A DNA stretch of 64,000 nt, from the sequence record OQ708376.1. One strand, 5' to 3'. The notes beneath the pieces were generated by a model, which made no database searches, was not told the origin of the DNA, and was given only the letters and a program-made list of their open reading frames with translations. Every line of letters begins with the position of its first letter. Position 1 is the stretch's first letter. The translations under genes were made by a program, and so were the position numbers. This document shows positions 56,766 to 56,933 of this stretch, one piece after another.

Positions 56766-56933
56766 ATGAAAGATATTTTTACAATAGATGCTAATGTTAT
56801 ATATGATTTTTATCTTACTGGTGGTGTAAAGGTAACGGGTACTGTGATTGATGTTTGTGATAATGGTATAATCTTAAGTGATGGCACTAGAGTTGTCCAA
56901 ACACACATCATTATGTTTGTCCCACATGTATAA
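56766..56933 (+). CDS. Hfq/Sm-like small protein, 55 aa (below ORF-track cut-off)
   Basis: [13 protein letters not shown]...GIIL...[11 protein letters not shown] aligns to Hfq IYLVNGIKLQGQI...VILL...MVYKHAISTVVP. Confidence 0.65.

What the first reader, a model, noticed from the sequence alone, without database searches (positions are those of the whole stretch)
56766..56933. Unannotated 55-aa Hfq/Sm-like protein
Seen: an ORF missed by the 60-aa cut-off, filling the gap between a terminator and a promoter. Y-L-x-x-G-x-K-x-x-G (residues 16-25) matches Hfq Y25-L-V-N-G29-I-K31-L-Q-G34, which includes distal-face poly(A)-binding residues. It ends in H-I-I-M-F-V-P, like H57-A-I-S-T-V-V-P. Proximal-face residues and most of the N-terminal helix are not evident. 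Established: Hfq hexamers chaperone sRNA-mRNA pairing. Inference: a phage RNA chaperone or a dominant-negative subunit that poisons host Hfq rings; a possible partner of the ncRNA at 7.7 kb.
Basis: partly seen in the sequence, partly recalled or inferred. Interest (0 to 1): 0.8.

Follow-up and report, generated by a model that had tools for sequence, protein, structure and literature searches.

The report
Phage-encoded minimal Hfq-like Sm protein
A 55-residue gene just after the ribonucleotide reductase genes of this E. coli jumbo phage is real and conserved across its whole phage clade, and it is predicted to fold like the bacterial RNA chaperone Hfq, although it lacks most of Hfq's known RNA-contact residues, so its function is still open.

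Summary
The window is an Asteriusvirus (PBECO4/121Q-like, Rak2-group) jumbo coliphage. The ORF at 56766-56933 (+) is a real gene. It occurs in 71 phage records, always between nrdB and a 77-aa gene. Identity falls to about 30%, dN/dS is 0.12-0.38, and a GGA/GGAG ribosome-binding motif is conserved.

"Unannotated" is only partly true. RefSeq calls it "membrane protein" (phrog_17251), a label with no support because there is no hydrophobic segment. Other records skip it.

AlphaFold2 (pLDDT 92.5) gives a five-stranded barrel. All top 50 PDB matches are Hfq (rmsd 0.9 A over 47 residues, 26-33% identity). A 35%-identical GAP32 orthologue behaves the same. Profile-profile comparison with Hfq gives P 1e-5 over the Sm1 motif, and 0 of 200 shuffled controls reach that score.

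It fails several Hfq membership tests:
- no N-terminal helix and no rim arginines;
- F42 is replaced by an invariant Gly;
- the Sm2 motif is not kept;
- Y25 and K31 equivalents are not conserved in the family;
- all members are acidic (pI 4.1-6.0);
- no Pfam hit.

Verdict: a divergent, phage-specific Hfq-fold protein. Ring formation, RNA binding and interference with host Hfq are all untested.

The parts
55591..56715 (+). nrdB (ribonucleotide reductase small subunit); upstream neighbour in every relative (context)
   Evidence: Pfam PF00268, E 3.6e-48. Synteny.
56728..56752 (+). Intrinsic-terminator-like hairpin (8-bp stem, 3-nt loop) plus T-run, between the nrdB stop and the small ORF
   Evidence: Annotated as a terminator (-9.7 kcal/mol) in phage G17. 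A GC-rich hairpin plus T-run sits at the same place in all 12 orthologous loci.
56753..56758 (+). Shine-Dalgarno-like ATGGGT, 8 nt before the ATG. It overlaps a TATAAT hexamer at 56758-56763.
   Evidence: Read from the sequence. A GGA/GGAG-type motif lies 6-9 nt upstream of the start in 12 of 13 orthologues.
56766..56933 (+). 55-aa gene for an acidic, all-beta, Hfq-fold (Sm-like) protein. Predicted strands: 12-17, 22-31, 34-37, 42-44, 48-53.
56938..56967 (+). Promoter-like site (TTGGAA, 18 nt, TG-n-TATAAT) that serves the next gene, not this one
   Evidence: An extended -10 (TGnTATAAT) is conserved after the stop codon in all orthologues. In CBB it matches the published divergent RpoD-like promoter with -35 TGAAACG (PMC5259590).
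56996..57229 (+). 77-aa gene with an acidic N-terminal half and a Lys/Arg-rich C-terminal tail; always the downstream neighbour (context)
   Evidence: phrog_16437, E 3e-41. No Pfam hit. Synteny.

Best explanation
The ORF is a real, translated, clade-core gene of Rak2-like jumbo phages. It encodes a minimal Sm-fold protein that is a remote and strongly diverged relative of bacterial Hfq. It keeps the five-stranded bent barrel and the Sm1 sequence motif. It has lost the N-terminal helix, the basic rim, the aromatic residue of the proximal pocket and the YKHAI Sm2 motif, and it has become acidic.

I infer that, like other free-standing Sm domains, it assembles through its exposed beta4 and beta5 edge strands into a small ring. 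I further infer that it uses the two best-conserved polar loops (D32-N33-G34, and residues 42-47: H-I-P-T-D-K in most members, R-V-V-Q-T-H here) to bind one specific ligand. In Hfq these loops line the pore on the proximal face. The ligand is most probably a single-stranded RNA segment or a nucleotide. It would act as a phage-specific RNA-binding or RNA-sequestering factor, not as a general sRNA-mRNA annealer.

The gene has no promoter of its own. It can only be transcribed by read-through of the nrdB terminator, which suggests a low, middle-phase dose.

Shown: the gene is real, is conserved and keeps its synteny; the fold and the Sm1 homology; the lack of canonical Hfq residues. Inferred: the ring, the ligand, the read-through expression.
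For: Gene reality:
- 71 phage records carry it.
- About 22 clusters exist among 1.84 billion representative proteins, all with the same pattern.
- Synteny is strict: nrdA-nrdB-[this]-77 aa-virion protein-MazG, including the most distant member.
- dN/dS is 0.12-0.38, and the SD-like motif is conserved.

Fold:
- AF2 with a 42-sequence alignment gives pLDDT 92.5 and five strands.
- Foldseek against PDB returns only Hfq in the top 50: TMq 0.72-0.80, rmsd 0.9 A over 47 residues, 26-33% identity.
- The GAP32 orthologue gives the same result (pLDDT 85; top 50 all Hfq).
- The independent BFVD model of the CBB orthologue superposes on the window model with TM 0.88.

Sequence:
- hhalign against 67 Hfq sequences gives probability 82% and P 1.1e-5 over window residues 11-37 versus Hfq 20-45.
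- The score is 29.1. 200 column-shuffled controls gave mean 10.0 and maximum 19.5.
- BLASTP gives E 0.007.
- Hfq and the Edc3 LSm domain appear among the top ten weak PDB sequence hits.

Conserved polar loops and the N-terminal D-I-F-T-F-D motif. Terminator and promoter layout.
Against: - No Pfam, NCBIfam or PADLOC family is matched, including the Hfq model.
- Foldseek E-values are only about 3e-3, because the domain is short.
- The profile match covers Sm1 only, not Sm2.
- All members are acidic: pI 4.1-6.0, net charge -1 to -7. That is unfavourable for non-specific RNA binding.
- The Hfq RNA-contact equivalents are absent or variable.
- Most members have a proline in the short beta4 (P44 in 36/42). 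This could weaken the beta4-beta5' pairing that builds Sm rings.
- Oligomeric state, RNA binding and expression were not and could not be tested here.
- No transcriptome or proteome evidence was found.
Confidence: 0.5

Rival explanations
1. Anti-Hfq or Hfq mimic. The protein co-assembles with host Hfq subunits, caps or binds the host ring, or acts as a decoy for Hfq's protein partners. This would disable or redirect host riboregulation during infection.
For: - The best structural matches are enterobacterial Hfq itself, at 26-28% identity.
- The protein is acidic whereas the Hfq core surfaces are basic.
- 27 of the 48 family sequences whose core could be located carry a C-terminal tail of at least 8 residues. 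In 20 of these the last six residues are net acidic, typically an E-T-x-E tip. [quoted passage not shown]
- Canonical hfq is essentially absent from 50,697 phage records, so this is not a simple spare copy.
Against: - The window's own protein has no acidic tail.
- The helix that contributes to Hfq subunit packing is missing.
- Beta4 is shortened and carries Pro in most members.
- No co-assembly model or interaction data could be generated.
- No paper in the searched library describes a phage protein that targets Hfq.
Confidence: 0.15
2. A small beta-barrel used as a protein-protein adaptor or small regulatory subunit in the nucleotide-metabolism and replication gene block (NrdAB, MazG-like pyrophosphohydrolase), or as a partner of the adjacent 77-aa protein with a basic tail. 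On this reading the Hfq likeness reflects shared ancestry or convergence of a very common fold and has no RNA role.
For: - It lies immediately after nrdB, invariably, in every genome.
- An acidic surface sits next to a neighbour with a Lys/Arg-rich tail.
- Many uncharacterised small phage proteins in BFVD have similar barrels, with TM 0.6-0.8.
- Canonical RNA-contact residues are missing.
- Borrelia FlgV is a published case of a protein previously annotated as Hfq that has another role (PMC11607428, abstract seen).
Against: - A terminator separates it from nrdB and a promoter separates it from the 77-aa gene, so it is co-transcribed with neither in a simple way.
- The PDB matches are exclusively Hfq rather than SH3, Tudor, chromo or OB domains.
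- The sequence-profile match to Sm1 is well above controls.
- It has no cysteines or cofactor motifs that would suggest an RNR accessory role such as YfaE, NrdH or NrdI.
Confidence: 0.2
3. Small membrane protein, as labelled in RefSeq and in PHROGs (phrog_17251: 'membrane protein; moron, auxiliary metabolic gene and host takeover').
For: Database labels only.
Against: - No 19-residue window reaches a Kyte-Doolittle mean of 1.6. The maximum is 1.13 in the window protein and 0.37-1.52 in eight relatives.
- Uncharged runs are only 9-14 residues in eight of the nine sequences checked and 19 in the other.
- Confident all-beta soluble barrel models.
- Net charge is -1 to -7.
Confidence: 0.02
4. Chance ORF in an intergenic spacer, with no protein product.
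For: It is short, has no promoter of its own, lies directly after a terminator, and is omitted by several annotators.
Against: - It stays open in the same frame in all relatives down to 30% identity, while other frames do not.
- dN/dS is well below 1.
- The SD-like motif is conserved.
- The family has invariant Y13, G34 and I48.
- The predicted fold is confident.
Confidence: 0.02

Closest known systems
Bacterial Hfq (Pfam PF17209, Sm superfamily)
   Same: - Five-stranded, strongly bent beta-barrel of the same size, with rmsd 0.9-1.3 A over 47-48 residues.
- The Sm1 motif pattern h-Y/x-L-x-x-G-x-x-h-x-G-x-h-x-x-x-D-x-x-h-h-L aligns with P 1e-5.
- The I-x-x-h-x-P ending of beta5 is similar.
- Many orthologues have a short tail with an acidic tip, like the E. 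coli Hfq C-terminal domain (PMC5606850).
   Different: - No alpha1 helix and no R16/R17/R19 rim patch.
- Gly instead of F42, and no YKHAI Sm2 motif.
- The Y25 and K31 equivalents are not conserved in the family.
- Acidic rather than basic.
- Not detected by the Pfam Hfq model.
- Encoded by a lytic jumbo phage next to nrdB rather than in the miaA-hfq-hflX context.
Archaeal and eukaryotic Sm/LSm domains, including the LSm domain of the decapping enhancer Edc3
   Same: Same superfamily fold. Edc3 LSm chains appear among the weak profile hits (5lop_C and 6y3z_C; E 0.8-0.9). Divergent LSm domains such as Edc3 mediate protein contacts rather than forming canonical RNA-binding rings (my knowledge, not tested here). 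That is a precedent for an Sm fold without an RNA role.
   Different: The Sm2 R-G motif is absent. The phage protein is closer in structure to Hfq than to these (top 50 all Hfq).
Hfq-like proteins of other mobile elements: zinc-finger-Hfq fusions on Thermococcus and Methanococcales plasmids, the Sm-like variant of Pyrobaculum spherical virus, and Hfq encoded on Bacillus anthracis pXO1
   Same: They are Sm/Hfq-fold genes carried by a virus or plasmid rather than a chromosome (PMC3543421; PMC5348863, listed). A Pyrobaculum spherical virus protein is among the BFVD structural matches (TMq 0.68).
   Different: Those are archaeal or Gram-positive elements. The plasmid proteins are recognisable Hfq domains by sequence and are often fused to a zinc finger. 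This family is a stand-alone 53-70-residue protein confined to Rak2-like jumbo phages of Gram-negative bacteria (mostly enterobacteria, plus Xanthomonas), and standard family models do not detect it.

Membership tests
Hfq (PF17209) | Sm fold: five-stranded, strongly bent antiparallel beta-sheet forming a small barrel | tested here: met
   AF2 pLDDT 92.5, strands 12-17, 22-31, 34-37, 42-44, 48-53. Foldseek top 50 all Hfq, rmsd 0.9 A over 47 residues. Same for the GAP32 orthologue.
Hfq (PF17209) | N-terminal alpha-helix (Hfq residues about 7-18) packed on the sheet | tested here: not met
   DSSP assigns no helix to residues 1-11 of the window model or residues 1-14 of the GAP32 model. Only 11 residues precede beta1.
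Hfq (PF17209) | Sm1 sequence motif | tested here: met
   hhalign of the family profile against 67 Hfq sequences: probability 82%, P 1.1e-5, window 11-37 versus Hfq 20-45. 0 of 200 column-shuffled controls reach the score. BLASTP E 0.007.
Hfq (PF17209) | Sm2 motif [Y/F]-K-H-A-[I/V] | tested here: not met
   The window has Q-T-H-I-I. The family consensus is T-D-K-I. Profile alignments stop before this segment.
Hfq (PF17209) | Scores above the curated family model threshold | tested here: not met
   No Pfam hit even at E up to 10, for the window protein and 12 orthologues. None in NCBIfam.
Hfq (PF17209) | Proximal-face uridine pocket (Q8, Q41, F42, K56, H57 in E. coli numbering; established knowledge) | tested here: not met
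   Mapping with frequencies. The Q8 region is absent. Q41 aligns with N33 (N/D). F42 aligns with G34, which is invariant. K56 aligns with T46 (D in 32/42). H57 aligns with H47 (H in 5/42, K in 32/42).
Hfq (PF17209) | Distal-face A-R-N site (Y25, G29, I30, K31, Q52; established knowledge) | tested here: inconclusive
   The window protein has Y16, G20, V21 and K22 at these positions. Across the family Y is present in 10/42 and K in 13/42, and Q52 aligns with R/H. The site could exist in this phage but is not a family feature.
Hfq (PF17209) | Basic rim patch (R16, R17, R19) needed for annealing | tested here: not met
   No Arg or Lys cluster in residues 1-15. Net charge -3 and pI 4.7. Family pI 4.1-6.0.
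Hfq (PF17209) | Homohexameric ring | not testable with these tools
   Only single-chain prediction was available. Multimer modelling or SEC-MALS is needed.
Hfq (PF17209) | Binds RNA and promotes sRNA-mRNA pairing | not testable with these tools
   Needs a biochemical or in vivo assay.
Sm/LSm superfamily (fold level) | Sm-type small beta-barrel with the conserved Gly of beta2 and Asp/Asn at the beta2-beta3 turn | tested here: met
   G25 is present in 41/42 sequences, D32 in 35/42, and position 33 is N or D in 42/42. Fold matches.
Membrane protein (label of phrog_17251 and RefSeq) | At least one hydrophobic transmembrane segment | tested here: not met
   Maximum 19-residue Kyte-Doolittle mean is 1.13 (window) and 0.37-1.52 in relatives. 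Charged residues interrupt every stretch.

The most novel reading that the evidence does not exclude
The protein is a phage-made counterfeit of Hfq that takes over or silences the host's Hfq-dependent RNA network. It could do this by entering or capping host Hfq rings or by competing for their RNA 3' ends. Alternatively, it is the dedicated protein partner of the undescribed, roughly 500-nt, multi-copy structured RNA that the same phages encode (window about 7660-8180). In that case it would define a virus-specific Sm ribonucleoprotein.
Probability: 0.15. Interest if true: 0.85.

Novelty: new variant of a known kind. Interest (0 to 1): 0.6.

Why it matters
Hfq is the central hub of small-RNA regulation in the enterobacterial hosts that most of these phages infect. 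In 50,697 phage records, canonical hfq appears only on what look like mislabelled host contigs. No paper in the searched library connects Hfq with Rak2-like phages.

A clade-wide, strongly diverged Hfq-fold gene therefore raises a clear question. Has a jumbo phage kept an Sm ring for its own RNA biology, or has it turned a copy of the host's chaperone against the host? Either answer would add a new type of phage-host RNA interaction, and both can be tested directly in laboratory E. coli.

There is also a practical point. The current public label, 'membrane protein', should be replaced.

Tried and rejected
- Family libraries. Pfam, NCBIfam and PADLOC scans of the protein and 12 orthologues gave nothing meaningful.
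The alignment was rebuilt from permitted proteins.
- Locus searches. The search for related loci with the alignment failed for lack of a conserved stretch. With the single protein it found only one IMG/VR locus.
- Spurious long hits. The exhaustive profile search returned some long repetitive surface proteins with several weak matches (P0056, P0058, P0061-P0065). Pfam shows that most of them are built from Big_6, InlB B-repeat or PPC repeats, so I treat all of these hits as composition artefacts.
- Hfq alignment diversity. The third protein search, using E. coli Hfq, returned only near-identical enterobacterial sequences, and the genome scan returned only gammaproteobacterial ones. The Hfq profile is therefore less diverse than I wanted. 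Early profile comparisons with thin Hfq alignments gave only 33-50% probability.
- Apparent phage hfq genes. tblastn of Hfq against phages hit 7 records. The one annotated locus examined lies next to miaA, and the others carry Salmonella organism names or are unverified records, so I take them as host contigs filed as phage.
- Weak Rfam hits. The CyaR/Arrc14 hits at 8327-8411 (-) are just the terminator of a 69-aa ORF.
- Literature. I looked for transcriptome or proteome evidence of expression and found none.
- Residue mapping. Residue-level structural superposition was not possible because model coordinates are not returned. The Hfq residue mapping therefore rests on sequence alignments and is uncertain by 1-2 residues in the beta4-beta5 segment.

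Full report
**Where we are**

A 3-kb stretch around the finding is 100% identical to Escherichia phage vB_EcoM_CRJP21 and 99.7-99.8% identical to PBECO4, SP27, G17 and other members of this phage group. These are Asteriusvirus jumbo myoviruses of the Rak2-like group. The local gene order is:
- nrdA (53218-55536)
- nrdB (55591-56715; Pfam PF00268)
- the 55-aa ORF
- a 77-aa gene
- a protein annotated as virion structural
- a MazG/PRA-PH-type pyrophosphohydrolase

**The observation**

- Upstream. A hairpin with an 8-bp stem and a T-run (56728-56746 plus tail) follows the nrdB stop.
- Downstream. A TTGGAA-18-TATAAT site with an upstream TG lies at 56938-56967.
- Conservation of the layout. I extracted the same region from 12 relatives spanning the clade. 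Every one has a GC-rich hairpin plus T-run, then a GGA/GGAG-type motif 6-9 nt before the start codon. After the stop codon every one has a TGnTATAAT extended -10 element in front of the next gene.
- Published support. In CBB this downstream element also carries the TGAAACG -35 box. The CBB authors described that box as a divergent RpoD-like promoter concentrated in the DNA-synthesis gene block (PMC5259590).
- Expression. The gene has no room for a promoter of its own. It must be expressed from transcripts that read through the nrdB hairpin. This is inference.

**Is it a gene?**

Yes.

- tblastn finds it in 71 phage records, all Rak2-like (Escherichia, Klebsiella, Salmonella, Erwinia, Yersinia, Serratia, Pectobacterium, Cronobacter, Xanthomonas phages). 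Identity falls to about 30% and the match is always full-length.
- Synteny is identical in all 12 loci inspected. It also holds in the metagenomic contig that carries the most distant member.
- Pairwise Nei-Gojobori estimates give dN/dS 0.12-0.38 with synonymous sites near saturation. The forward frame is the only one that stays open in all relatives.
- An exhaustive profile search of 1.84 billion representative proteins finds about 22 true clusters and nothing outside this pattern.
- Long repetitive surface proteins that appeared with weak multi-stretch matches are composition artefacts.

**Annotation status**

RefSeq PBECO4 annotates the ORF as gp470 'membrane protein'. It matches phrog_17251, which carries the same label (E 1e-31). 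G17, phAPEC6, slurp01 and RaK2 leave it out.

The membrane label has no basis:
- No 19-residue window approaches a transmembrane hydropathy value, and charged residues interrupt every stretch.
- All members are acidic (pI 4.1-6.0, net charge -1 to -7).
- The predicted structure is a soluble beta-barrel.

**Fold**

- The model. With a 42-sequence alignment built from permitted database proteins, AlphaFold2 gives mean pLDDT 92.5. It predicts five strands (12-17, 22-31, 34-37, 42-44, 48-53) and no helix before the first strand.
- PDB search. All 50 best Foldseek matches are Hfq chains from E. coli, Salmonella, Pseudomonas, Neisseria, Herbaspirillum, Chromobacterium, Listeria and Aquifex. TM-scores normalised to the query are 0.71-0.80, typical rmsd is 0.9 A over 47 residues, and identity is 26-33%. 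The E-values (about 3e-3) are modest, as expected for a 50-residue domain.
- Family-wide check. I repeated the procedure with the GAP32 orthologue. It is 35% identical and belongs to the majority subgroup with a different beta4-beta5 loop. It gave pLDDT 85, the same strand order and a disordered C-terminal tail. Again all 50 best matches were Hfq.
- Independent model. The BFVD model of the CBB orthologue superposes on the window model with TM 0.88.

**Sequence-level support**

- BLASTP of the ORF against E. coli Hfq (fetched from MG1655) aligns residues 16-52 with Hfq 25-62. It gives 14/39 identities and E 0.007 for the single comparison.
- Family profiles searched against PDB sequences put Hfq and the Edc3 LSm domain in the top ten, at non-significant E-values of 0.4-0.9.
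- Profile-profile comparison improved as the Hfq alignment grew. Probability was 33-50% with one or seven sequences. With 67 distinct Hfq sequences it rose to 82%, P 1.1e-5, over window 11-37 versus Hfq 20-45, which is the Sm1 motif.
- As a control I shuffled the columns of the Hfq alignment 200 times. Scores averaged 10.0 (sd 2.3, maximum 19.5) against 29.1 for the real one.
- The Sm2 half does not align at profile level.

**What is and is not kept**

I used the BLASTP register and the column frequencies of the 42-sequence family alignment. The roles of the Hfq residues are established knowledge, not tested here.

| Hfq feature | Phage equivalent | Conservation in the family |
|---|---|---|
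| L26, G29, G34 (structural) | L17, G20, G25 | Kept: L17 in 41/42, G20 in 33/42, G25 in 41/42 |
| D40-Q41 turn | D32-N33 | D in 35/42; N or D in 42/42 |
| Y25 (distal face) | Y16 | Y in 10/42 |
| K31 (distal face) | K22 | K in 13/42 |
| F42 (proximal stacking residue) | G34 | Invariant Gly |
| K56 | T46 | D in 32/42 |
| H57 | H47 | K in 32/42, H in 5/42 |
| Helix with Q8 and the R16/R17/R19 rim patch | Absent | - |

The family's own conserved features are:
- an N-terminal D-I-F-T-F-D motif (F5 in 41/42);
- invariant Y13, G34 and I48;
- the loop H-I-P-T-D-K-I (R-V-V-Q-T-H-I in the window's subgroup);
- F51 and P53.

The two conserved polar loops sit where Hfq and other Sm proteins build their pore-side nucleotide pocket. 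This is why I think that face is the working surface.

**Tails**

Of the 48 family sequences whose core could be located, 27 carry a tail of at least 8 residues after the core. In 20 of these the last six residues are net acidic, typically an E-T-x-E motif.

[quoted passage not shown] That tip binds the basic rim of the Sm core and competes with nucleic acid (PMC5606850). The phage proteins have no basic rim of their own, so such a tip would need a target elsewhere. This is the best, and still weak, argument for action on host Hfq. The window's own protein lacks the tail.

**Is this known?**

- tblastn with the Hfq core against 50,697 phage records finds 7 records. One lies next to miaA, and the others carry Salmonella names or are unverified records, so they appear to be host contigs filed as phage. 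Canonical hfq is therefore not a usual phage gene.
- Full-text searches found no paper that links Hfq to Rak2-like phages, and none that describes a phage protein acting on Hfq.
- The nearest precedents are Hfq-like domains on archaeal plasmids, an Sm-like variant in Pyrobaculum spherical virus (PMC3543421) and the pXO1 Hfq.
- Borrelia FlgV was previously annotated as Hfq and is now described as controlling flagellar assembly. It is a caution against reading function from this fold (abstract).

**Mechanism and rivals**

My best reading (confidence about 0.5 as a whole) has three layers:
- a real gene, about 0.95;
- an Hfq-type Sm fold with remote homology, about 0.8;
- a ring that binds a specific RNA or nucleotide through the conserved loops, about 0.35.

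It is unlikely to be a general RNA matchmaker, because the rim and helix needed for annealing are gone.

Rivals:
- an anti-Hfq mimic (0.15);
- an RNA-independent adaptor in the nucleotide-metabolism block, or a partner of the neighbouring basic-tailed protein (0.2);
- a membrane protein (0.02);
- a chance ORF (0.02).

An acidic net charge does not by itself exclude RNA binding. To my knowledge several archaeal Sm proteins are acidic yet bind oligo(U) in their pore.

**The RNA at 7.7 kb**

- Window 7533-8370 has no ORF of 50 aa or more, apart from the 3' end of endonuclease VII at its left edge, and GC rises to 0.44.
- A TGTGCTATAAT element lies at 7642-7652 on the + strand.
- The core (about 7705-8185) is 70-75% identical at DNA level across genera whose proteins are only 30-50% identical. 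It occurs in the same number of records (71), with 4-5 matching places per genome.
- In BF and XbC2 the best copy lies in another gene context.
- A seven-phage alignment has long invariant blocks. RNAalifold predicts 96 pairs, 32 of them with compensatory double changes, including a long-range closing helix.
- The + strand folds with z = -4.3.
- Rfam has no match, even at E up to 1.

It looks like an undescribed, roughly 500-nt structured RNA. Nothing ties it to the Sm-like protein beyond co-occurrence in the clade.

**Verdict**

The fold-level interpretation is supported. The functional interpretation is open, and the family fails several defining features of Hfq proper. I rate it a new variant of a known kind, with interest 0.6.

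Noticed in passing
window 7640-8195 (+): A roughly 500-nt non-coding region with its own extended -10 promoter (TGTGCTATAAT at 7642-7652). It is 70-75% identical at DNA level across all Rak2-like genera, with 4-5 matching places per genome and copies in at least two gene contexts. RNAalifold on 7 phages predicts 96 pairs, 32 with compensatory changes. MFE z is -4.3. No Rfam family matches even at E up to 1. It looks like an undescribed large structured phage RNA.
   Followed up: partly
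window 56966-57229 (+): The downstream neighbour is annotated as 87 aa in RefSeq PBECO4 but as 77 aa in G17. The longer start (ATG at 56966) lies inside the -10 hexamer of the conserved promoter, so the ATG at 56996 behind GGAGAAG is the likely start. The protein has an acidic N-terminal half and a Lys/Arg-rich tail, belongs to phrog_16437 and has no Pfam hit.
   Followed up: partly
orthologues of the 55-aa protein (for example L007, L008, L012; P0005-P0040): Of the 48 family sequences whose core could be located, 27 have a C-terminal tail of at least 8 residues. In 20 of these the last six residues are net acidic, typically an E-T-x-E tip. [quoted passage not shown] The window's protein lacks the tail (PMC5606850).
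   Followed up: partly
phage collection records CAKLQH020000029.1, CAKLQF020000030.1, AFYI01000007.1, AGRM01000005.1, OR844988.1: The only canonical hfq genes found in 50,697 'phage' records appear to be bacterial contigs or unverified assemblies filed as phage. One lies next to miaA, and two carry Salmonella organism names.
   Followed up: yes
window 56708-56763: The nrdB stop codon region reads C-TATAAAT-T, which resembles the late-promoter-like ATAAATA motif reported for CBB. A TATAAT hexamer also lies only 2 nt before the ATG of the small ORF. Several relatives have TATAAT at the nrdB stop as well. Whether any of these initiates transcription is unknown.
   Followed up: no
window 8327-8411 (-): Weak Rfam hits to the Hfq-dependent sRNA families Arrc14 and CyaR fall below the gathering scores. 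They consist only of the terminator hairpin and U-tract after the 69-aa ORF at 8371-8580 (-). This is not evidence of an sRNA.
   Followed up: yes
OQ708376.1 (vB_EcoM_CRJP21), the record identical to the window: The product names listed under the nrdB-to-MazG stretch are structural protein, DNA helicase, ribonuclease HI and dihydrofolate reductase. They do not match what the sequence encodes here, which suggests a shifted or faulty annotation in that record.
   Followed up: no
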